Position numbers and translations under genes: made by a program. A stretch of 64,000 nt of DNA, taken from positions 1 through 64,000 of IMG/VR virus record IMGVR_UViG_3300008113_000003, one strand, 5' to 3'. The notes under the pieces were generated by a model. That model was not told where the DNA came from, did not search any database, and saw nothing but the letters and a program-made list of their open reading frames with translations. Positions 3,093 through 46,189 of the stretch are shown piece after piece (the stretch's first letter is position 1; every line of letters begins with the position of its first letter).

Positions 3093-3497
3093 CTATTTTT
3101 GTTTATCAATTCTAATTACCGAACCCTGACCATACATTACTTGAATGTAATAAGACCCTAATTTATACATTTCACCAGTAAATTGGTTAGCGTAAATCTC
3201 ATATTCATCACCAACCTCAGAACCGTACTTCTCAGCTACCCCAAGTAAAATCCAAAATAATTTTTCACGTGGTTCATAACCTCTCCTATATTCACGATCT
3301 CTATATTTATCGGAACCATACCAGTTATCAAGATGTTCTATTGATCCGTCAATATCATCCTTAATACGATTCCACATACGATCAACCCATCGATCTTTAT
3401 ACTCGTCTTCTCGTCTAAGTTTCTCCGCAAATTTTTCCAAAGATTCTTTTCCTTCAGGGGAATCAAAGAATGCGTTTATTTCCTCAATGGTCATCAT
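3093..3497 (-). CDS. hypothetical protein
   Basis: ORF track, ATGA overlap with upstream gene. Confidence 0.65.
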   Translation of the reverse strand: MMTIEEINAFFDSPEGKESLEKFAEKLRREDEYKDRWVDRMWNRIKDDIDGSIEHLDNWYGSDKYRDREYRRGYEPREKLFWILLGVAEKYGSEVGDEYEIYANQFTGEMYKLGSYYIQVMYGQGSVIRIDKQK

Positions 3498-4237
3498 TGT
3501 TCTGTTGTTGGTTTAAGCCACATACCCGTACCAAACATGATCTCAAGTATCCTCGGGTTAATTATTCTAATCTTCTCAAACAACTCAAGGGTTTTTAACG
3601 TGTCATGTTTCATCATCTTGAATACCTCATCTCTGATTCTTTCTTGTGAAACAACCAGTTCAAGTTTATCAACCACACTGTCCATCAAACAAGTTTCCAT
3701 TATTGATGTTGAGATGGTAAATCCTTTGGTAATTGAGAATCTAAACGCTCTTAATAACCTCAACGGATCATCCAACATAGTATCTTTAGCATCCAATGGG
3801 GTGATCAACACTTTGTTCTCCAAAGCTGACATACCATCAAAAAAGTCAATGATATTACCATTCTCATCTTTTGCAAGTGCGTTCAAAGTAAAATCCCTAC
3901 GCTGTAAGTCATCATGTAAAGTCCCAGGAAGAACAATTGGTTGTCTTGTATCTTTGAAATAACCAACTTCTTTACGGGCCATAACAAAGTCAGCCACACC
4001 CTCATATTTGTGGTTCTTAGGGAATTTCGCCCTGATTGTAAAGCAATCATTTGTTACCAAGAAGATTTCAAAACCCTCTTCCTTAAGGTAATTCTCAAGC
4101 ACATCAAACATATCGGGTGCAGAGTAATGGGTCAATAGTAACTTCTCGTCAGGAACGGCAACATAGTCAACGTCCTTAGATTGAAGCCCTAAGATCTCAT
4201 CTCTTACTTTTCCACCTACTTCATAAAACTTAAACAT
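3494..4237 (-). CDS. cca: tRNA nucleotidyltransferase (CCA-adding)/poly(A) polymerase family, short form
   Basis: VGGKVRD...DVDY, DLQRRDFTLNALA, DDPLRLLRAFRF, SQERIRDE class II NTase motifs. Confidence 0.85.
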   Translation of the reverse strand: MFKFYEVGGKVRDEILGLQSKDVDYVAVPDEKLLLTHYSAPDMFDVLENYLKEEGFEIFLVTNDCFTIRAKFPKNHKYEGVADFVMARKEVGYFKDTRQPIVLPGTLHDDLQRRDFTLNALAKDENGNIIDFFDGMSALENKVLITPLDAKDTMLDDPLRLLRAFRFSITKGFTISTSIMETCLMDSVVDKLELVVSQERIRDEVFKMMKHDTLKTLELFEKIRIINPRILEIMFGTGMWLKPTTEQ

Positions 4238-15257: not shown

Positions 15258-15946
15258 GCGTATTGTGTTCTTAATAATTTAACGATGTCCATAGCATCAT
15301 CAATTGCGTTATGGGTAACGTGTGGATCCATCTTTGCACGCTCTTTACAAAGTGACAGCCCTGGGATAGCCTCATCATTCTTCCAATCAACAAATAGAAT
15401 TGACGGATCGATTGTTCTACCTCTAGCTTTCAACACTTGCTTCCATCTTGGTAATCTCTCCAAGAACTTATTATCGAAGTTAGCGAAGTTCTTACCAGCA
15501 CCGTTAAAGTAATACGGTTTCATCTTGGATGTCAATGCTGGGTAAGTCTTACCGTTAATCACCTCAACCACTCTATTCTGATAAAGAGGGTTAAAAGTAT
15601 CGGGACCGCCATCCAAAGCTTTGTGATCATATAAGAAATGGAAGATTCGTCTGGTGACATCTTCTTCATAAAGATATTCACGACCAGTTTTTTCCACTAT
15701 CTCAGCCTTAGCCTCTGGAGTCTTAGCTATTTTATAACTAAGGATATCAGAGATGAGTTCTTTGTTCATATTAAGAGCAAAGATTTCACCCTCAATACGT
15801 TCACGTATGATTGCGATTTCGAGTTTAGGTAACTCGTCAAACGGTTTCAAATTATTGGTGTCCTCAACAACCAATCCGATTGATAATGTTTGAGTATTCT
15901 CGTTATCCAAACCTGTTGTTTCTATGTCAATGCTTACGTATATCAT
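15254..15946 (-). CDS. DEDDh 3'-5' exonuclease
   Basis: SIDIETTG, GKNFANFD, HNAIDDA. Confidence 0.85.
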   Translation of the reverse strand: MIYVSIDIETTGLDNENTQTLSIGLVVEDTNNLKPFDELPKLEIAIIRERIEGEIFALNMNKELISDILSYKIAKTPEAKAEIVEKTGREYLYEEDVTRRIFHFLYDHKALDGGPDTFNPLYQNRVVEVINGKTYPALTSKMKPYYFNGAGKNFANFDNKFLERLPRWKQVLKARGRTIDPSILFVDWKNDEAIPGLSLCKERAKMDPHVTHNAIDDAMDIVKLLRTQYA

Positions 15947-16968
15947 TACTTTTCGTTTTTTAATAAGAATTTATTTGAAATAGCTTTGAAGCTTACAGTT
16001 CTGTCCATGGTTCTGAACACAACACCTTCTCGATCAAATCTGTCGTTAAGTACTGACTTACCATCAGCAAACGCCAAACACTCATCGATTGTTTGTGGTA
16101 ACTTCATTGTCAAGTTAGTTAACATCGGAACAATCTCCAATTTAAACTGATGTTCAAATAAAGCTAAGAACATTGGTAAACCATAGTAAGTTTGAGAATC
16201 GATATCAAAGGCGTTGAAGAATCTAACGGTATGGCCCTTAATCTTATATGGGTTACCCTGAATACCTTCTCCGATTAACTCACCTTGTATGGCCAAGTTC
16301 CGTCCATTCTCACGTAACTTTTCTTCAAGTTTTAACTCACGAGCCACCTTCCAGAAAGTATTACCTTCAGTCTCCTCAAGGTCTAAGTTTCTAGAACAAA
16401 CACCAAAGACATCACCATTCAAATAGAATGTTGCGGAGCTACCATCAAGTTTTTCGGTTACATAGAAATCCAAACCTTCCTCAACCCATTTTGCGTAGTC
16501 TTTGGTCAAGTTCTGTACACGCTCCTCATCTGTCTTGCGTAAGAAACCTGGGAAGTTACCACGAACCTTACCAGCAAGTTCAGCTGGAATAGGTGGTTCA
16601 TATTTAACGATACCCAATCTCTCAGTAACATCAAGACCCTCATAAGCTGTCCAACCAAAGTCCCCAAAGATACTTATAGGTAAGATCAAACCTTGTGAAA
16701 CTTGCCCACGAAGTCTGATTGTTTTAAGACGGAAACCTTCTTGGTCACCCATTCTCTTAAATGAACTCTTACGTAAGAACTCAAACTCTTCCCTAACGGG
16801 TAAAAACGAGTCGATCTCACAGTAAACTACATAGTCACCAACTTTGTGACCAACATTCTTTGCAACAACAACATCCCAGTTGTTGATACGTGCAACTTCA
16901 ATAGCATCAGCGCCTTCAATAGGTCTGATATCGGCTATTACTTGTATGCTTGCTAACTTTCTTTCCAT
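15946..16968 (-). CDS. RNA ligase, DRB0094/Rnl5 family
   Basis: RKLASIQ, PIEGADAIE, LRGQVSQGL, KTDEER, TEKLDGSS, REGVVF, FKAISN. Confidence 0.9.
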   Translation of the reverse strand: MERKLASIQVIADIRPIEGADAIEVARINNWDVVVAKNVGHKVGDYVVYCEIDSFLPVREEFEFLRKSSFKRMGDQEGFRLKTIRLRGQVSQGLILPISIFGDFGWTAYEGLDVTERLGIVKYEPPIPAELAGKVRGNFPGFLRKTDEERVQNLTKDYAKWVEEGLDFYVTEKLDGSSATFYLNGDVFGVCSRNLDLEETEGNTFWKVARELKLEEKLRENGRNLAIQGELIGEGIQGNPYKIKGHTVRFFNAFDIDSQTYYGLPMFLALFEHQFKLEIVPMLTNLTMKLPQTIDECLAFADGKSVLNDRFDREGVVFRTMDRTVSFKAISNKFLLKNEK

Positions 16969-18311: not shown

Positions 18312-18563
18312 TTAAAAATAATCATTACACCAAATTGGTGTCTTTTCTCCCACATACCCGCCATGGATATTGTAGTAGTAATGCTCTAAAGCATCTTCTT
18401 CAGTCATCTCATCATTAATGATAAGTATATCGATAATTTTACTCATGGAGTAGATAAGTCTACCAGTTTGGTCATCATAACCTATGATAGCCTCATCTAA
18501 TCCATCAGCTTTTAAGAACTCATCCTCTGGATTCTGTTCAATTATTAAATCTAGCATGCTCAT
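18312..18563 (-). CDS. conserved phage hypothetical protein
   Basis: ADGLDEAIIG...YNIHGGYVGEKTPI. Confidence 0.65.
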   Translation of the reverse strand: MSMLDLIIEQNPEDEFLKADGLDEAIIGYDDQTGRLIYSMSKIIDILIINDEMTEEDALEHYYYNIHGGYVGEKTPIWCNDYF

Positions 18564-19630
18564 ATTTTTCTGTATTCTGGATAAATTAAGTCCCAAATTA
18601 TTTTACTGCAATCTCTTTTGTCTAACATTGTAAACAAAATAGACGGGTGCTTGTATTGCAAAGCATATTGAGCAAAGGTTGCTCTATACTTTTCTTTTGG
18701 TACATTGTGGGTTCCCAAACCTTTCACTATTGTATTAAAAATCCAAGTGTACTCCTTTTCAAGGGTTTTAAACTGAGAAGTTAACTCATCTACATAGATT
18801 TTAATCTTTGCATGAAATTCATCTGGTACGTCAACCAATGAAGCCATTAAATCTTCACCGTTGGATAATGTTTCCCAGATGTTTCTTGTCGAAAAGTTTG
18901 TCATGATTTTGTGTAATCTAACATACTCCTCAAACTTGATCTTAACACGATAACCAGATGGGTAGAATCTAATAACAAACCCCTCTTTACCAGATTCATT
19001 TAAATTTTGGTATCTTTTAAATAAATCTTCAGTTAATGGATCTATCGAAGTCCAAACAACATCCTCATAGTCTATACCAGAAGCTCTAAACATAGATTTT
19101 GCTGTCGCCCAATTCAACTCACCCTCAGGTGTTGTTGCACCAAGAAATGTTATCATATCTTCACCATAGTCAACAACAATCCTGTTCTCAGGATAGATGA
19201 TCTCACATAGGTAAGTAACATTAGGGATAAAACGTTTTAAATCGTATTTTGATTTAAGAATTTCCAAACCTTTAACAGATTGGTCAGATGTAAATGAACC
19301 CCTTGTTGCTAATAACCATTCACCATTATAGTTAAATAAAATACCCAAAGAGCCGTCCATTTTTTCTTGGACATAAACATACTCGCTATCCCATGGAATG
19401 ATATCCTTATCAATAACTTCTTCATAGTTAAAGAATTTTGGGAATGGTTTAGCAATCACAGCACCAGAATCATCAGTGACAAGTCCACGGCATGCAATAG
19501 TAACCTCATCCCATAACATTTCGTACTGCACCTTTTCGGTGTAGTTCCAAATTGTCAATGGAAGAGTTGGGTGTGTTTGTTTATACAACAACCCATCCTC
19601 GTGATACTTGTTTAATGTTTCTAAGTTCAT
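18560..19630 (-). CDS. T4 Rnl1-like RNA ligase
   Basis: CRGLV, FPKFFN, EKMDGSL, ATRGSF, EGFVI, KIK..EY. Confidence 0.9.
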   Translation of the reverse strand: MNLETLNKYHEDGLLYKQTHPTLPLTIWNYTEKVQYEMLWDEVTIACRGLVTDDSGAVIAKPFPKFFNYEEVIDKDIIPWDSEYVYVQEKMDGSLGILFNYNGEWLLATRGSFTSDQSVKGLEILKSKYDLKRFIPNVTYLCEIIYPENRIVVDYGEDMITFLGATTPEGELNWATAKSMFRASGIDYEDVVWTSIDPLTEDLFKRYQNLNESGKEGFVIRFYPSGYRVKIKFEEYVRLHKIMTNFSTRNIWETLSNGEDLMASLVDVPDEFHAKIKIYVDELTSQFKTLEKEYTWIFNTIVKGLGTHNVPKEKYRATFAQYALQYKHPSILFTMLDKRDCSKIIWDLIYPEYRKI

Positions 19631-33545: not shown

Positions 33546-33581
33546 AAAATTAGGGCGATATAAAATAATACCGCCCGTTAG

Positions 33582-33964
33582 TGGAGATGAGGGGATTCGA
33601 ACCCCTGTCTTGTCTAGCCATTAATTAACCCTCGTTCACATGCTTATTCAGTTTTGCTAAACTGACAAACTTCACAATTCCCTTATTTTTACGGTTCGGT
33701 TTACTGAGAACTAATCTTCCGCTCGCTGTTACGGTAGCGAATACCGTTTTGCAGTTTTGGGTGACTGTTGTCAGCCAAGCTTTCGCTTAGACTAATTCTA
33801 GATCTGCAAACTCAACAGACTGACCGTTAAACGTGATGTTTCCGTCAGCATCGATAAAGCTCTCGCCATTTAAAACTGTATATAGGTTATTAAAGTGTTT
33901 CCAATACTAACACTGCATGCATCAAATTAAAGAACGTATCTATCAATCAATTCCAGTCATCCCC
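33582..33964 (-). ncRNA. ssrA: tmRNA; tag ORF 33787-33867 encodes (A)GESFIDADGNITFNGQSVEFADLELV
   Basis: 5' GGGGATG pairs with 3' CATCTCC-A with G3:U70; T-arm GGGGTTCGAATCCCC; 383 nt; no anticodon arm. Confidence 0.92.
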
Positions 33965-40334: not shown

Positions 40335-40425
40335 TGGCTGACACAGGACTCGAACCTGCACTGGGCAACCTTACAACCTTTCGGTCTTGGGGGCTTGGGC
40401 ACCATCCCGCATTACGCAGTCAGCC
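40335..40425 (-). ncRNA. tRNA-like RNA without canonical anticodon arm
   Basis: GGCTGAC/GTCAGCC-A acceptor, GCAGGTTCGAGTCCTGT T-arm, expanded middle with GAAA tetraloop. Confidence 0.6.
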
Positions 40426-40429
40426 ATTT

Positions 40430-40690
40430 TTCCCCACCTTGAGATTACAGATGAGTAGTCATATCGGTTTGTTTACTTTGAAACAACCTGCTGGGCATCC
40501 CCGTTAAAAAAAGTCAAACTACTGGGAGCTTCTGTTACCTAGCTTTATTCCCACGAGACTGGCGTTTTATAGAGCCACATCCAGTTTCTACCCATGGGAT
40601 AGTCTTTTACGTGGATATTAGGATGTCCAGTCCGATACCCTATCAAGTTTAAATGAGACATTGACAAGTCTGCTGAGTATCTCTCACCCA
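40430..40690 (-). ncRNA. candidate large structured RNA(s), about 260 nt
   Basis: Nested CTTGA/TCAAG, TATCGG/CCGATA, CTGGACATCC/GGATGCCCAG; 5' hairpin GAGATA-CTCAGCA...TGTCTC. Confidence 0.5.
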
Positions 40691-40767: not shown

Positions 40768-40801
40768 AGCATGTGCTCTCACCAATTGAGCTATATCACT
40801 A
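40736..40801. repeat. 33-bp tandem duplication of the tRNA-Ile 5' half
   Basis: gcatgtgctctcaccaattgagctatatcacta twice. Confidence 0.95.
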
Positions 40802-40885: not shown

Positions 40886-41007
40886 TAGTCAGGACAGGAC
40901 TTGAACCTGTATTCTCTATTATTATCACCAAGTTTCGGTTACATTGTTTCTGTTTGCTTGGTATAGAGTTTAGGATACTTTCAGCGTCTACATTCCGCCA
41001 CCTGACT
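40886..41007 (-). ncRNA. tRNA-like RNA (AGTCAGG scaffold) with non-tRNA insert
   Basis: AGTCAGG/CCTGACT-A, Leu-like D arm, ACAGGTTCAAGTCCTGT; insert CTCTAT/ATAGAG, ACCAAG/CTTGGT. Confidence 0.65.
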
Positions 41008-41169: not shown

Positions 41170-41260
41170 TAGTCAGGACAGGATTCGAACCTGAACTCCC
41201 CATTATAGGGAGCGTGATACAGCCCCCGAAGCAGCTGTGACACCCATTTGCCACCTGACT
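41170..41260 (-). ncRNA. tRNA-like RNA (second AGTCAGG scaffold)
   Basis: Same acceptor and T-arm as 40886-41007, different middle; no 7-nt U33 anticodon loop. Confidence 0.65.
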
Positions 41261-41687: not shown

Positions 41688-41759
41688 CTGTGATGGGGAA
41701 TTCCGAGATCCCGACCTGAGAGTTAACAGCTCCCTGCTCTGCCTCTGAGCTACATCACA
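41688..41759 (-). tRNA. tRNA-Asn(GTT) with non-canonical T-loop
   Basis: GGGAG-CTGTTAA-CTCTC; T-arm GGGATCTCGGAATTCCC lacks GTTC. Confidence 0.82.
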
Positions 41760-41764
41760 ATTTG

Positions 41765-41879
41765 CGGGGATGAGAGGAATCGAACCTCTGGTTCAGGCTT
41801 GAGATGCAAAATTATATGCTGTATGGAATCTCATCAGATTCACTTTTTTTACAGCGTGTTACCACTACACCACACCCCC
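41765..41879 (-). ncRNA. tRNA-like RNA whose anticodon arm is replaced by a TGAGAT-..ATACAGCA..-ATCTCA module
   Basis: GGGGGTG/CATCCCC-G acceptor, D arm, AGAGGTTCGATTCCTCT T-arm. Confidence 0.7.
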
Positions 41880-42234: not shown

Positions 42235-42450
42235 ATTTGTGACTACTCCCTGGGAAGTTTCGTCACGATTAACGTGAATGGGGTGATCAAACCCACTAAC
42301 ATCACGGGCATAGGTTTTCACAATAAACCATTACCAAAAACGCCAGTTTTTAACACCCAAAACTGAATAAACGGTCCGACTCTTTGTAACCCCGATTTTA
42401 AGTGTATGTTACTACCGTCTCGAACAGACCCCTACTGCGAACACTCCCAG

Positions 42451-42595
42451 TAGCCCCAGTAGGAATCGAACCCACCTTGTAAATTACATGCAATAATCCT
42501 TAGACTTTCGCTCCGATCCTAGTATTAAGGAGTGTCTAACCATTTTACCATCATTTACCCACTCGCAGCTACGTTAACGTGCTTGCTATAGAGCT
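42451..42595 (-). ncRNA. tRNA-like RNA with long insert
   Basis: AGCTCTA/TGGGGCT-A acceptor, GTGGGTTCGATTCCTAC T-arm; insert TTAGAC/GTCTAA, CTCC/GGAG. Confidence 0.55.
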
Positions 42596-42917: not shown

Positions 42918-42965
42918 AAATTTCGGAATGCGTTTTTTGTCAAAGTAAAAGTTTAAGATAAAATA

Positions 42966-43095
42966 CAGGATGAATTGTACGTGCTCTAACCAACTGAGCT
43001 ACTCTGAACGTGCCACTTAAGGCTGTGTTCAAAGGTTGGATTCGAACCAACGACCACGAGGTTAACAGCCTAAAGAAATATGCAGAAACCATCCT
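42966..43095 (-). ncRNA. circularly permuted tRNA-Asn(GTT)-like RNA with Y-RNA (YrlA)-like closing stem
   Basis: Order anticodon-T arm-acceptor 3' strand-linker-acceptor 5' strand-D arm, enclosed by AGGATG/CATCCT. Confidence 0.8.
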
Positions 43096-43111
43096 CATTA
43101 TTTTATCTTTG

Positions 43112-43337: not shown

Positions 43338-43393
43338 CGGGATGGATTTTGTTTGTATTTATCCGTTACATGTTAATGTGCTGTAACCATCCC
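43338..43393 (-). ncRNA. minimal Y-like hairpin GGGATGG-TTACAGCA...CCATCCC
   Basis: 7-bp helix followed by the TACAGCA motif shared with other array RNAs. Confidence 0.65.
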
Positions 43394-43411
43394 CTTTATC
43401 TTTCGATGCTA

Positions 43412-43512
43412 CAAAATTAAGAAGGATTTTTTAAACTTCCAAATGTTTGCAACATTTTTTTTTATTTTTTTCTCAAAGAACGTTTTCTTTTCAGAATTGT
43501 GGTACAAAACTA
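43412..43512 (-). promoter_or_regulatory. two TAnnTTTG promoters (43505-43512, 43412-43419) and boxA-like GTTCTTTGAGA (43471-43481) heading the tRNA array
   Basis: Motif matches, each with upstream TTTG. Confidence 0.65.
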
Positions 43513-44599: not shown

Positions 44600-46189
44600 T
44601 TATATTTTAAATGTGGTGAAACCTGTTTCACCGTTGTTGTCTTTAATAAAATTAATATGTTGTGCTCTCCCATCTTTATGGATAATCACATGCGATTGTA
44701 ACCATGAGCTTGGGCCAATATTATAACCAACTCTTAGTTTTGTTGAGGTACCAACCGCTAAAGCACCGTCTTTTCTCCCTGGTGAATGGTAATGACCAAC
44801 AATGATCTTCGTGTTTAGTGTTCTAAACTGATTTAGAGACCCTCTGCTGCCATTTGAACCCACATCGCCATGTTGTCCTAGTTCCCAATCTTTAACAATG
44901 TAAGAAGCGTTCCTATTCAATGTGATGAACTTAGGAAACTTCTGGTTAATTATCTCTGGTATAACACCTTTAACATCACCTTTAGCGTATTGTCTCAGAA
45001 GCATTGCGGAGTATTCCATATACATCAAAGAGTTTTTACTTGTTGGTTGTCTTTTCCAATCCTCATTCTTTAACCATCGATCTAAAAAGTCATCATGGTT
45101 ACTTCTAACAATAACAACATTTTTATAATCTCTAAAAGACTCCAACCCCTCGAGCATATTATTTATCTCGTTTTCAACTGAGTTGGTGCCGTTCATTTCT
45201 TTCGCAAACTGAATAAACGGATCTTTCATTTCATGGTGGCTAATTGAGTTACCGTCAAACACGTCATGTAGGATAACATGTTCTGGTTTCATTTTACCCA
45301 ATAATTCATGTGTCTTATCAATCACATCTTGATCATGATGTCCATAGTGAATGTCACCAAACACAATTGCTGACAATGAATCAACTTTACTCACCTGACC
45401 ACCCTCAACTTTATGACAAAGATCGGTAAAATTACCAGTTCTATCATGTGCTGTTACTTGTCTAACATAGAATGTATCCTCATCTTTAATCTCAACGATC
45501 GCAAAACCATATGTGTGGTGAAACTCACCTTTCTTACCAGCTTTTGAATCCGTGTAGTTTAATTTGGTTACAGCGCCTGTGGTTAACATCATTTTTGGTT
45601 TATTACCCTCAAGAACTGAAATCATTTCAAGCTGTACTTTCGGTGCGCCAAAGATGCACGAATTAATACCACTCACACCTTGCAAACCGCTCATTGGGTT
45701 GGTTGCTGTTGGTTGGATCTTAAAGTCGGACATGATTGACACATATTTGTGCACATCATGTCTATTCGCATCCAAATAAGGTACAACAGCGCTGTCCCAC
45801 TCTTCATGGTCTTTATCTGTAAACACTGATGTTGGGTTTTTGTAACGTCCAGCAATAACGTGTATATCAGCACCTAAAAAGTCAGCATATGCTTTTATAT
45901 TTTCAAAGAATGGTTTATGTACTGGTGTGTCATTCTGAGCCCAAGTAATAAGGAACATTTTTTGTTCTTTATTTGTTTGTCTCTGCTTAGCCATCAGATA
46001 TTGTTCTGACTCAACCTCAACCTTTTCTTTAAAGTTTAATTTTTCAGAACACCATTTTCTAACTGTTCTTTCGGATTTACCAAATAAATCCATAAGCAAT
46101 TTCATTCTATCATCCCAAGATAAATCCTTGTCGGTGTAAATCTCTCTTGCTTTGTTAATTTGTTGTTCTGTTAAATCTTTAAATTTCAT
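44600..46189 (-). CDS. HTH plus metallophosphoesterase-type nuclease (T5 A1-like by recollection)
   Basis: N-terminal SERTVRKW; GDIH, HDVFD, SNHD, HGD.GSNGSRG, GHYH. Confidence 0.7.
   Translation of the reverse strand: MKFKDLTEQQINKAREIYTDKDLSWDDRMKLLMDLFGKSERTVRKWCSEKLNFKEKVEVESEQYLMAKQRQTNKEQKMFLITWAQNDTPVHKPFFENIKAYADFLGADIHVIAGRYKNPTSVFTDKDHEEWDSAVVPYLDANRHDVHKYVSIMSDFKIQPTATNPMSGLQGVSGINSCIFGAPKVQLEMISVLEGNKPKMMLTTGAVTKLNYTDSKAGKKGEFHHTYGFAIVEIKDEDTFYVRQVTAHDRTGNFTDLCHKVEGGQVSKVDSLSAIVFGDIHYGHHDQDVIDKTHELLGKMKPEHVILHDVFDGNSISHHEMKDPFIQFAKEMNGTNSVENEINNMLEGLESFRDYKNVVIVRSNHDDFLDRWLKNEDWKRQPTSKNSLMYMEYSAMLLRQYAKGDVKGVIPEIINQKFPKFITLNRNASYIVKDWELGQHGDVGSNGSRGSLNQFRTLNTKIIVGHYHSPGRKDGALAVGTSTKLRVGYNIGPSSWLQSHVIIHKDGRAQHINFIKDNNGETGFTTFKI

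What the first reader, a model, noticed from the sequence alone, without database searches (positions are those of the whole stretch)
41765..41879. tRNA scaffold with the CAGCA module grafted in place of the anticodon arm
Seen: normal acceptor, D and T arms, but about 65 nt replace the anticodon and variable arms, containing TGAGAT-TCCATACAGCATATAATTTTGC-ATCTCA. It is the non-permuted counterpart of 42966-43095. GAATCT can pair alternatively with AGATTC, so it may switch conformation. Inference: it keeps a free acceptor end that could receive CCA and be charged while bound by the Ro-like protein.
Basis: partly seen in the sequence, partly recalled or inferred. Interest (0 to 1): 0.7.

Follow-up and report, generated by a model that had tools for sequence, protein, structure and literature searches.

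The report
Phage tRNA-shaped RNA carrying grafted module
A large uncultured freshwater phage encodes, inside its tRNA gene array, a 115-nt RNA with normal tRNA acceptor, D and T arms but a 65-nt structured module where the anticodon arm should be. The same module also occurs in this phage clade in a circularly permuted tRNA-like RNA and as a stand-alone leader, so it looks like a natural "tRNA scaffold" for a non-decoding RNA whose partner is unknown.

Summary
The element is real: window 41879..41765 on the minus strand is a 115-nt tRNA-shaped gene (Rfam tRNA 43 bits) with about 65 nt in place of the anticodon and variable arms. Five further scaffold copies turned up in three related phage contigs. 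Across the six, the acceptor, D, T and one insert helix (H1, GAAUCU/AGAUUC) are 98.5% paired and 15 of 22 pairs show double changes.

What it called the alternative pairing is the true helix.

The "CAGCA module" is real. It consists of an A-tract, H1, 3-4 nt and then C-N-G-C-A-W. It recurs in tRNA scaffolds, in the permuted tRNA-like RNA at 43096..42965, and as about 56-nt leaders just upstream of tRNAs.

- No Ro (TROVE) gene is found in this record or in a complete 299-kb relative, and Ro-binding motifs are absent.
- The discriminator and acceptor vary between copies, so charging is not a conserved feature.
- Excising the insert leaves no canonical anticodon arm, and a library contig spans it unspliced.
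- A close relative lacks the whole gene.

Best reading: a processed, non-decoding tRNA-scaffolded ncRNA whose module binds an unidentified factor.

The parts
41765..41879 (-). Element A: a 115-nt tRNA-shaped gene. It has acceptor, D and T arms plus a 65-nt insert in place of the anticodon and variable arms. A 5-nt spacer separates it from the next tRNA (Asn-like, 41759..41688).
   Evidence: Rfam tRNA 43 bits with a 50-nt insertion. Covariance model R1 scores it 125 bits. The gene is absent as a clean 120-bp indel in the close relative L017.
41873..41879 (-). Acceptor stem, 5' strand (GGGGGUG). It pairs with 41772..41766 (CAUCCCC). The discriminator G is at 41765.
   Evidence: All 7 pairs show changes on both sides across the six family members and 100% of cells are paired. 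The discriminator is G>A in a natural variant and U in the L004 orthologue.
41856..41870 (-). D arm (GUGU / AGUGGUA / ACAC) with G18G19.
   Evidence: Rfam alignment. The arm is 92% paired in the family.
41844..41850 (-). A-tract (A7) entering helix H1 after 2 nt. This is the 5' junction strand of the module.
   Evidence: An A-rich strand is present at the equivalent place in the six scaffold copies (A5-A9, one interrupted by C) and in the leaders; in the permuted copies the corresponding strand is A/U-rich (UACAAUU in the window's B, UAUAAAUU in L017) rather than an A-tract. A natural variant has A6 plus an A>G change.
41826..41841 (-). Helix H1: GAAUCU - GAUG loop - AGAUUC.
   Evidence: Six pairs, 100% paired, 4 of them with double changes in the family. 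It is part of the minimum-free-energy fold. The loop varies (GAUG, GUAG, GUGU), or is replaced by the RNA ends in the permuted and leader forms.
41817..41821 (-). CAGCA motif (family consensus C-N-G-C-A followed by A/U), 4 nt after H1. This is the 3' junction strand of the module.
   Evidence: Aligned in 17 instances as CAGCA, CUGCA, CCGCA or CGGCA, always 2-5 nt after an H1 strand.
41790..41816 (-). Rest of the insert: A/U-rich (UAUAAUUUUGC...) and then CAUCUCAAGCCUGAACC up to the T arm. No conserved helix was found here.
Evidence: RNAalifold finds no consensus pairs here.
41773..41789 (-). T arm (AGAGG / UUCGAUU / CCUCU).
   Evidence: Five pairs, 100% paired, 3 with double changes.
42965..43096 (-). 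Element B: a circularly permuted tRNA-like RNA carrying the same module. Its order is H1 strand AGGAUG, GUUU, CUGCA-UAU, an anticodon-like hairpin, T arm, closed acceptor hairpin, D arm, an A/U-rich strand, then H1 strand CAUCCU.
   Evidence: Rfam YrlA gives a partial hit of 32.7 bits over model positions 24-84. Four orthologues give 26 consensus pairs, 6 of them compensatory. Positions 25-64 resemble the 3' part of tRNA-Asn genes.
43339..43394 (-). Stand-alone copy of the module (leader): GGGGAUGG-UUA-CAGCA-...-ACAAAAU-CCAUCCC. It ends 7 nt upstream of tRNA-Phe, the first tRNA of this block.
   Evidence: Read. Seven leader copies in five phages give a 7-bp H1 with 49 of 49 cells paired and 3 covarying pairs.
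42918..42952 (-). Remnant (3' half only) of a second leader copy upstream of tRNA-Arg. The copy is intact in L017, L022 and L023.
   Evidence: Compared with L017 11882-11955 and the L022 and L023 copies.

Best explanation
Element A is a non-decoding, tRNA-shaped small RNA.

Steps inferred from what is known of RNase P, RNase Z and CCA-adding enzymes:
- The tRNA half (acceptor stem, T arm, D arm and elbow) serves as a processing and stability scaffold.
- A is co-transcribed with the neighbouring tRNAs and cut out by RNase P and 3' trimming.
- It probably receives CCA.

Shown here:
- The position of the anticodon arm is occupied by a clade-specific RNA module. A helix (H1) has an A-tract entering one strand and, 3-4 nt after the other strand, the motif C-N-G-C-A followed by A/U-rich sequence.
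- The same module works with H1 capped by a loop (A), with H1 formed by the RNA's own ends around a tRNA-like body (B), or alone as a leader before tRNAs.
- The functional surface is therefore the H1 junction, not the H1 tip and not an anticodon.

Inference, partner unknown: the module is a binding site for a protein or other factor, and the tRNA body supplies maturation, stability and possibly a second contact. This would be the modular logic of Y RNA/YrlA, but without Ro.
For: tRNA body:
- Rfam tRNA scores 43 bits and the tertiary-contact nucleotides are present (U8, A14, G18G19, C48, UUCGAUU).
- Six scaffold copies exist in four phage contigs. The acceptor, D, H1 and T helices are 98.5% paired, 15 of 22 pairs have changes on both sides, 0 of 500 shuffles reach this, and slid controls give about 40%.
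- Model R1 scores the distant copies 43-50 bits against at most 37 for ordinary tRNAs.

Module in three topologies:
- 17 aligned instances show G[GA]AUG-NN-UN-C-N-GCA-W on one side, and the opposite side is A-rich: an A-tract in the scaffold and leader copies, A/U-rich (UACAAUU, UAUAAAUU) in the permuted copies.
- The leader H1 is paired in 49 of 49 cells with 3 covarying pairs.
- The permuted form has 26 consensus pairs, 6 of them compensatory.

Not a decoder:
- There is no 5-bp stem with a 7-nt loop.
- ARAGORN with introns allowed gives mutually inconsistent solutions (Tyr-AUA, Tyr-GUA, Val-AAC, or none) at positions 29-33.

Context:
- A lies 5 nt from the next tRNA on the same strand.
- The phage encodes a PolyA_pol-family nucleotidyltransferase.
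- A metatranscriptome-library contig (depth 57) spans A unspliced.
- An identical A occurs in several independent freshwater runs.
Against: - No partner has been identified. No expression ends, CCA addition or stability have been shown. The RNA-library contig could be carried-over DNA.
- Only two deep lineages of the A subtype exist (the window and L004), plus one variant. Insert structure beyond H1 is therefore unresolved, and the alignment used for the pair counts was fitted to the model.
- The window and L004 copies are 44/48 identical from position 8 to the end of H1 but only 4/7 and 11/17 identical in the acceptor 5' strand and the T arm. This could reflect recombination between different tRNA bodies rather than compensatory evolution.
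- The gene is dispensable: a roughly 85-90% identical relative lacks it cleanly.
- Leader copies next to a promoter-like site would also fit a purely cis-acting role.
Confidence: 0.45

Rival explanations
1. One reading: a Y-RNA-like RNA bound by a Ro (Rsr/TROVE) protein through the module, with a free acceptor end that is CCA-tailed and aminoacylated while bound, and able to switch between two pairings.
For: - The permuted sibling B has the YrlA order T arm, closed acceptor, D arm and scores 32.7 bits on RF02553. That is the same range (33-47 bits) as YrlA-like RNAs next to rsr in Bacteroidota genomes.
- About 6% (19 of 301) of sampled Bacteroidota genomes encode TROVE proteins, so a host Ro cannot be excluded.
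- The overall architecture, an end-formed stem, an asymmetric A-rich loop and a tRNA-like domain, resembles YrlA.
Against: - No TROVE domain is found in the 206-kb record or in four relatives, including a 100%-complete 299-kb genome with the same RNAs.
- The Ro-contact motif GNCGAAN0-1G (PMC4201824) and the Bacteroidota form GUGYYGUAS are absent from A, B and the leaders.
- The RF02553 match covers only the tRNA-like part and lies below the gathering score of 69.
- The adjacent 529-aa ORF is T5 A1-like, not Ro.
- The discriminator and acceptor are not conserved.
- The proposed switch helix is not conserved.
Confidence: 0.1
2. The module is a cis-acting signal of the long untranslated tRNA transcript, for example a processing or anti-termination element. 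It is reiterated along the array, and A and B are just tRNA-like contexts in which copies of it landed.
For: - Stand-alone copies sit 7-13 nt upstream of tRNA-Phe and tRNA-Arg in five phages, with a conserved CCGA(A/U)AUUU-type spacer.
- The window's Phe leader begins about 15 nt after a TTTG-N20-TAATTTTG site. From memory, this matches the Bacteroidetes promoter consensus.
- Modules recur on the same strand at 43.39, 43.09, 42.94 (remnant) and 41.85 kb.
- Some leaders contain CUUUGAAAA-like strings that, from memory, are reminiscent of rrn boxA.
Against: - A purely cis role does not explain why whole tRNA bodies with paired acceptor and T stems are maintained around the module in at least two body types and in a permuted form.
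- The boxA-like strings are absent from the scaffold copies.
- L017 does without A, and the window does without half of the Arg leader.
Confidence: 0.17
3. A decaying or chimeric tRNA gene: a former tRNA whose anticodon region was overwritten by recombination with a leader or B-type module. It is tolerated but has no function of its own.
For: - There is a clean presence/absence polymorphism between close relatives.
- Arrays in this clade carry homing-endonuclease-like ORFs (NUMOD3 protein in L017) and other indels and partial duplications.
- The window and L004 copies have a mosaic identity pattern.
- In the L004 paralogue at 3505-3627 a 5-bp anticodon-like stem still flanks the insert.
Against: - Scaffold copies persist in four divergent phages with every acceptor, T and H1 cell but two still paired.
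- The tertiary nucleotides are intact.
- Module strands are conserved in sequence across contexts.
- An identical A is found in several independent water samples.
Confidence: 0.13
4. An intron-containing tRNA: the insert is excised, by self-cleavage or by a nuclease plus the phage RNA ligases, to leave an ordinary decoding tRNA.
For: - The insert sits in the anticodon region.
- The phage encodes Rnl1-like and Rnl2-like RNA ligases.
- In L004 3505-3627, removing 50 nt would leave a stem plus a 7-nt loop AUGUAGA.
Against: - For A itself no excision leaves a 5-bp stem and a canonical loop.
- ARAGORN's solutions differ in isotype and site between copies, and there is none for the orthologue.
- At 65 nt the insert is far below group I intron size, and no ribozyme family matches even at E<=10.
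- The nucleotides flanking CUGAUGA pair with each other, so this is not a hammerhead core.
- The only joint seen in RNA libraries skips the entire gene and equals the L017 DNA genotype, while another contig spans A unspliced.
- The module also exists permuted and stand-alone, where it cannot be an intron.
- There is no RtcB.
Confidence: 0.04

Closest known systems
YrlA (bacterial and phage Y-RNA-like RNAs, Rfam RF02553; Chen et al. 2014, PMC4201824)
   Same: Both are modular ncRNAs made of a tRNA-like domain (T and D arms, elbow nucleotides) plus a separate stem and loop module. The sibling element B has the same permuted order (T arm, closed acceptor, D arm, ends forming a stem). It scores like the rsr-adjacent Bacteroidota YrlA-like RNAs.
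   Different: A is not permuted: its acceptor is open and the module sits at the anticodon-arm position. No Ro gene lies nearby or anywhere in a complete relative. The Ro-contact motif is absent. The score is below the Rfam gathering threshold and comes only from the tRNA-like part.
Deinococcus radiodurans Yrn1 (Y RNA)
   Same: According to PMC4201824, its T- and D-like arms are oriented so that the RNA ends lie at the acceptor position and a stem-loop occupies the anticodon position. This is the same topology as A.
   Different: In Yrn1 the Ro-binding site lies in the end-formed stem. In A the ends form a plain acceptor stem and the special module is internal. RF01053 gave no match in the array.
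Engineered 'tRNA scaffold' for recombinant RNA expression, with the anticodon arm replaced by a cargo RNA (from memory: Ponchon and Dardel 2007)
   Same: The design is identical: acceptor, D and T arms are kept for processing and nuclease resistance, and the cargo is grafted on the anticodon stem position.
   Different: That is a laboratory construct. Here the arrangement is natural, evolves with compensatory changes and has permuted and free versions of the cargo.
Small stable RNAs encoded in phage tRNA clusters (from memory: T4 species 1 and 2 RNAs, rnaC and rnaD; T5 small RNAs)
   Same: These are non-tRNA stable RNAs encoded among phage tRNA genes and matured with them. Their function is unknown.
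   Different: No sequence comparison was possible with the tools. No similarity to cultured phages was found by blastn beyond tRNA parts.
Circularly permuted tRNA genes and other permuted ncRNAs (from memory: Cyanidioschyzon permuted tRNAs, two-piece tmRNA)
   Same: One RNA architecture is encoded in two circular permutations within a genome (A and the L022-type copies against B).
   Different: Those are processed back to a canonical molecule. Here the anticodon-like loops are not conserved (GUU, UCU, GUC, AUU in B orthologues), so no canonical tRNA is the product.

Membership tests
Canonical decoding tRNA | 7-bp acceptor stem, D arm with G18G19, and T arm with UUCRANY loop | tested here: met
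   Rfam tRNA scores 43 bits (gathering score 29). The arms were read and covary.
Canonical decoding tRNA | 5-bp anticodon stem with a 7-nt loop (U33, purine 37) and a normal variable region, 70-95 nt overall | tested here: not met
   65 nt lie between the D and T arms. ARAGORN's default scan does not call it. Only H1 is conserved in the insert.
Intron-containing tRNA | Removing the insert at one defined site leaves a canonical anticodon arm of the same isotype in orthologues | tested here: not met
   ARAGORN run with -i gives Tyr(AUA) for A, nothing for the orthologue, and Tyr(GUA) or Val(AAC) for others, at sites 29-33.
Intron-containing tRNA | A spliced form exists in RNA | tested here: inconclusive
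   One RNA-library contig spans A unspliced. The only joint skips the whole gene and equals a DNA genotype. These are assembler contigs only, with no reads of mature small RNAs.
Intron-containing tRNA | The insert belongs to a known self-splicing or self-cleaving class | tested here: not met
   No Rfam family other than tRNA and YrlA matches at E<=10 over 39.5-44.5 kb. The CUGAUGA flanks pair with each other and the loop letters vary.
YrlA / Y RNA | Permuted tRNA-like domain (T arm, closed acceptor-like stem-loop, D arm) inside an end-formed stem | tested here: not met
   A has an open acceptor and normal arm order. The sibling B does meet this feature.
YrlA / Y RNA | Ro-contact motif GNCGAAN0-1G near the 5' end (PMC4201824), or the form GUGYYGUAS seen in rsr-adjacent Bacteroidota RNAs | tested here: not met
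   The motifs are absent from A, B and the leaders. The only array matches (41441 and 40197) lie in unrelated spacers at the chance rate.
YrlA / Y RNA | Encoded within about 4 kb of a Ro60/Rsr (TROVE) gene on the same strand | tested here: not met
   PF05731 is not found in the 206-kb record (69% complete) or in four relatives, including one 100% complete. The controls gave matches.
YrlA / Y RNA | Reaches the Rfam RF02553 gathering score (69 bits) | tested here: not met
   A region: 24.2 bits, a hit that spans A's T arm plus the next tRNA. B: 32.7 bits over model positions 24-84 only. Note that rsr-adjacent Bacteroidota RNAs also stay at 33-47 bits.
YrlA / Y RNA | Physically bound by Ro/Rsr | not testable with these tools
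   This needs immunoprecipitation or an in-vitro binding assay.
tmRNA-like (tRNA-like domain plus tag ORF) | G3:U70 in the acceptor and a conserved tag reading frame ending in a stop | tested here: not met
   The acceptor has G3-C70. The 13-codon AUG..UGA frame in A has no stop in the two L004 copies (read). A separate true tmRNA lies at 33579-33964.
CNGCA-junction module family (defined here) | Helix H1 with an A-rich strand 1-3 nt before one strand and C-N-G-C-A-W 2-5 nt after the other | tested here: met
   A fits this alongside 16 other instances. The descriptor hits the family loci, against 1 hit in 1.16 Mb of unrelated loci. It is not specific enough on its own, giving 3 hits against about 1 expected in the genome.

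The most novel reading that the evidence does not exclude
These phages use a natural tRNA-scaffold system. One small RNA module (the H1 junction with A-tract and CNGCA) is displayed in trans on tRNA bodies, both unpermuted and permuted, and is also made as a free leader. In this reading it titrates or redirects a host factor that acts on tRNA-shaped RNAs, for example a tRNA-directed defence nuclease, an RNA quality-control protein of the Rsr type, or a processing enzyme. This would fit a phage that also carries its own tRNAs, tmRNA, CCA-adding-type enzyme and Rnl1/Rnl2 ligases.
Probability: 0.2. Interest if true: 0.8.

Novelty: new variant of a known kind. Interest (0 to 1): 0.6.

Why it matters
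tRNA-like non-coding RNAs are known (YrlA/Y RNAs, tmRNA, viral tRNA-like ends). A natural RNA that keeps a complete, open-ended tRNA body and swaps only the anticodon arm for a separately evolving module has not, to my knowledge, been described. It is the design that RNA engineers invented as the "tRNA scaffold".

One phage clade encodes the same module unpermuted, circularly permuted and free. This gives a rare natural experiment on which parts of an RNA are functional, and a direct handle for finding the partner by pull-down with three topologies as mutual controls. It would also show that part of what genome annotation counts as odd, intron-bearing or pseudo-tRNAs in large phages is a distinct class of ncRNA.

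Tried and rejected
1. Hammerhead or box C/D reading of CUGAUGAG. Rejected: the flanks pair with each other with compensatory changes, there is no GAAA or conserved CUGA partner, the loop letters vary, and there is no Rfam hit.
2. Mini-ORF or tmRNA-like tag (AUG..UGA, 13 codons). The frame is not conserved in the L004 copies.
3. Closing stem P1 GCUGUA/UACAGC from the MFE fold. 73% paired against 65% in shuffles (95 of 500), so it is not supported across the family.
4. A-tract pairing with a downstream U-run. Plausible in single sequences. In the L022-type copies RNAalifold instead pairs the U-run with a second A-run, and nothing consistent emerged.
5. CNGCAAA as a tRNA-Cys anticodon-loop mimic. 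The letter at the U33 position is A, C, G or U, so it is not a decoding loop. It remains possible as a protein-recognition mimic but was not tested.
6. A Bacteroidetes-type -7 box (TAATTTTG) inside A. There is no -33 partner and it is not conserved in the orthologues.
7. Wider family searches:
   - Four pattern scans of IMG/VR for the module and one for the permuted form found only this clade.
   - The metagenome scan found only identical copies.
   - A scan of 185,579 species genomes for the leader pattern gave only chance coding hits such as Walker-A sites.
   - blastn against 50,697 phage genomes matched only tRNA parts.
8. Literature searches for a described equivalent found only the YrlA paper.
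9. DNA runs were laid to harvest more natural variants. A was identical in three runs (X5, X10, X14); in X3 no piece covered A.

Full report
**Where the window comes from.** The window is the first 64 kb of a 206-kb IMG/VR virus record estimated to be 69% complete. All its tRNA genes and a tmRNA lie on the minus strand between 32.4 and 43.4 kb. Neighbouring genes include:
- a T5 A1-like metallophosphoesterase (44600-46189) and a PF04308 RNaseH-like protein;
- further away, Rnl2-like and Rnl1-like RNA ligases and a PolyA_pol-family nucleotidyltransferase.

No close relative exists among 50,697 deposited phage genomes.

**The observation.** On the minus strand, 41879..41765 reads as follows:
- acceptor GGGGGUG/CAUCCCC;
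- U8;
- D arm GUGU-AGUGGUA-ACAC;
- 65 nt of insert;
- C48;
- T arm AGAGG-UUCGAUU-CCUCU;
- discriminator G.

Rfam's tRNA model gives 43 bits with the anticodon arm replaced by an insertion. ARAGORN does not call it. The minimum-free-energy fold uses GAAUCU/AGAUUC, not TGAGAT/ATCTCA.

**Relatives of the element.**
- Pattern scans and a protein-anchored search recovered related phage contigs.
- L004 (a 120-kb contig) carries an orthologue at 2300-2420 and a paralogue on a different tRNA body at 3505-3627.
- My own scan for T arm plus acceptor found three more scaffold copies of a second subtype: L004 3173-3293, L022 13466-13587 and L023 11566-11688.
- A covariance model built from the first three scores these at 43-50 bits, above every ordinary tRNA (at most 37 bits).

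On the six-member alignment:
- The acceptor, D, H1 and T helices are 98.5% paired. 15 of 22 pairs have changes on both sides, 0 of 500 shuffles reach this, and partners slid by 1-3 columns give 38-45%. The caveat is that the alignment was fitted to the model.
- The MFE closing stem gives 73% against 65% (95 of 500).

The supported anatomy of the insert is therefore: A-tract, 2-3 nt, H1, 3-4 nt, C-N-G-C-A, then A/U-rich sequence.

**Natural variation.**
- A metatranscriptome-library contig (depth 57) spans A with these changes: one A fewer in the tract, A36G, the H1 loop GAUG changed to GUAG, and the discriminator changed from G to A.
- Three DNA runs from other studies hold A unchanged.
- Metagenome contigs hold identical copies.

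**Presence and absence.**
- L017, about 85-90% identical in DNA, joins window 41880 directly to 41760. It lacks A and its 5-nt spacer precisely.
- The same 120-nt skip occurs in an RNA-library contig. That joint is therefore a genotype, not a splice.

**The module in other topologies.**
- Element B (43096..42965) and its orthologues in L017, L022 and L023 read in this order: H1 strand AGGAUG, 4 nt, C[U/A/C]GCA, A/U-rich sequence, an anticodon-like hairpin, T arm, closed acceptor hairpin, D arm, A/U-rich sequence, H1 strand CAUCCU.
- B-type copies have 26 consensus pairs, 6 of them compensatory.
- The second scaffold subtype uses the same H1 sequence (CAUCC/GGAUG) closed by a GUGU loop. It is therefore the exact circular permutation of B.
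- Free copies of about 56-70 nt (H1 strand, 3 nt, C[A/G]GCA, about 35 nt, A-run, H1 strand) lie 7-13 nt upstream of tRNA-Phe and tRNA-Arg in five phages. Their H1 is paired in 49 of 49 cells with 3 covarying pairs.
- The window has an intact Phe leader (43394..43339) and only the 3' half of the Arg leader.
- Seventeen instances align on G[GA]AUG-NN-UN-CNGCA-W.
- B's positions 25-64 resemble the 3' part of tRNA-Asn genes. However, the loop letters differ among orthologues (GUU, UCU, GUC, AUU), so B does not decode either.

**Ro and Y RNA.**
- PF05731 (TROVE) is absent from the record. It is also absent from four relatives, one of them 100% complete at 298,833 bp and carrying scaffold, permuted and leader copies.
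- RF02553 matches only the tRNA-like part of B (32.7 bits, model positions 24-84) and, spuriously, A's T arm plus the next tRNA (24.2 bits).
- To calibrate, I sampled 301 Bacteroidota genomes. 19 have TROVE genes. The RNAs next to them score only 33-47 bits, so B's score is not by itself disqualifying.
- Those RNAs share a 5' motif GUGYYGUAS and a U-rich 3' strand, corresponding to the GNCGAAN0-1G Ro contact described in PMC4201824. Neither motif occurs in A, B or the leaders.
- Conclusion: B works like a YrlA in architecture, but neither A nor B can be filed as one, and a phage-encoded Ro is excluded for the complete relative.

**Charging and CCA.**
- CCA is not encoded: the discriminator G is followed by CAAAU.
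- The phage has a PolyA_pol-family enzyme, and A keeps the acceptor and T minihelix. CCA addition is therefore plausible by inference.
- The acceptor pairs differ in every copy and the discriminator is G, A or U. There is no G3:U70 and no G-1. No aminoacylation identity is conserved.

**Splicing.**
- ARAGORN with introns allowed gives inconsistent isotypes and sites, and nothing for the orthologue.
- No ribozyme or intron family matches.
- There is no RtcB, although Rnl1-like and Rnl2-like ligases exist.
- The module also exists where it cannot be an intron.

**Mechanism.**
- The best-supported reading is a processed, non-decoding tRNA-scaffolded RNA whose functional surface is the H1 junction (A-tract and CNGCA strands).
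- The H1 tip can be a loop of any sequence or the RNA's own termini. The anticodon-side contents are otherwise free to vary.
- What the junction binds is unknown.
- The cis-acting leader reading is the main rival. The chimeric-pseudogene reading is weakened by maintained pairing and intact tertiary nucleotides, but it is not excluded, because the window and L004 copies are mosaic (44/48 identical from position 8 to H1, 4/7 and 11/17 in the stems).

**Limits.**
- The family was found only in one phage clade.
- The A subtype has two lineages plus one variant.
- There are no reads of mature small RNAs.
- Host assignment to Bacteroidota rests on tRNA similarity to Cellulophaga phages and on a promoter-like site judged from memory.

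Noticed in passing
window 43339-43394 (-) and 43411-43445 (-): A stand-alone copy of the module forms the leader 7 nt upstream of tRNA-Phe. About 15 nt before it lies TTTG-N20-TAATTTTG. From memory this fits the Bacteroidetes -33/-7 promoter consensus and hints at a Bacteroidota host.
   Followed up: partly
window 40886-41007 (-) and 41170-41260 (-): Two further odd tRNA-like genes (122 and 91 nt) share the same acceptor (AGUCAGG/CCUGACU) and a similar T arm but carry different inserted domains without the CNGCA module. ARAGORN calls the shorter one tRNA-Pro(CGG) at low quality, and Rfam gives 33.4 and 25.8 bits.
   Followed up: partly
window 42446-42566 (-): Another non-canonical element: a T arm followed by a closed stem-loop (permuted style). 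It is preceded by a UCCUUA/UAAGGA helix, then UUAU-UGCAU and A/U-rich sequence. It may be a degenerate relative of the module.
   Followed up: no
window 40340-40660 (-); L004 3340-3500: A conserved non-coding stretch (GGGGAUGCC..ACUACUCAUC..CUCAAGGUGGGG) is followed by a tRNA-like end with acceptor GGCUGAC/GUCAGCC and a T arm but no normal D or anticodon arms. No Rfam family matches it.
   Followed up: no
window 40768-40800 (-): A 33-nt tandem duplication of the 5' half of the tRNA-Ile(UAU) gene sits directly upstream of the intact gene.
   Followed up: no
window 41688-41759 (-): A tRNA-Asn(GUU)-like gene with an aberrant T loop (CUCGGAAU). Rfam gives 46.5 bits and ARAGORN does not call it. 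It is the gene that abuts the A indel.
   Followed up: no
L017 11088-11729 (+), between tRNA-Asp and element B: A 213-aa ORF with NUMOD3 motifs (homing-endonuclease-like) is inserted in the relative's array and absent from the window. The arrays of this clade are hot spots of gene-sized indels.
   Followed up: partly
window 3494-4237 (-), 15946-16968 (-), 18560-19630 (-), 33579-33964 (-): The phage carries an RNA-maintenance set: a PolyA_pol-family (CCA-adding-type) nucleotidyltransferase, an Rnl2-like ligase with an OB domain, a T4 Rnl1-like ligase and its own tmRNA. No RtcB was found.
   Followed up: partly
window 44600-46189 (-): The 529-aa ORF next to the array matches phrog_1745 ('DNA transfer protein', T5 A1-like metallophosphoesterase) at E=5e-152. 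It has the size of Ro60 but is unrelated to it.
   Followed up: yes
L131-L144 (Bacteroidota rsr loci): YrlA-like and Deinococcus-Y-like RNAs next to TROVE genes in Bacteroidota all score below the Rfam gathering thresholds (33-47 bits against 69, and 39-43 against 80). They share a 5' GUGYYGUAGA motif. The Rfam models under-detect Y RNAs in this phylum.
   Followed up: partly
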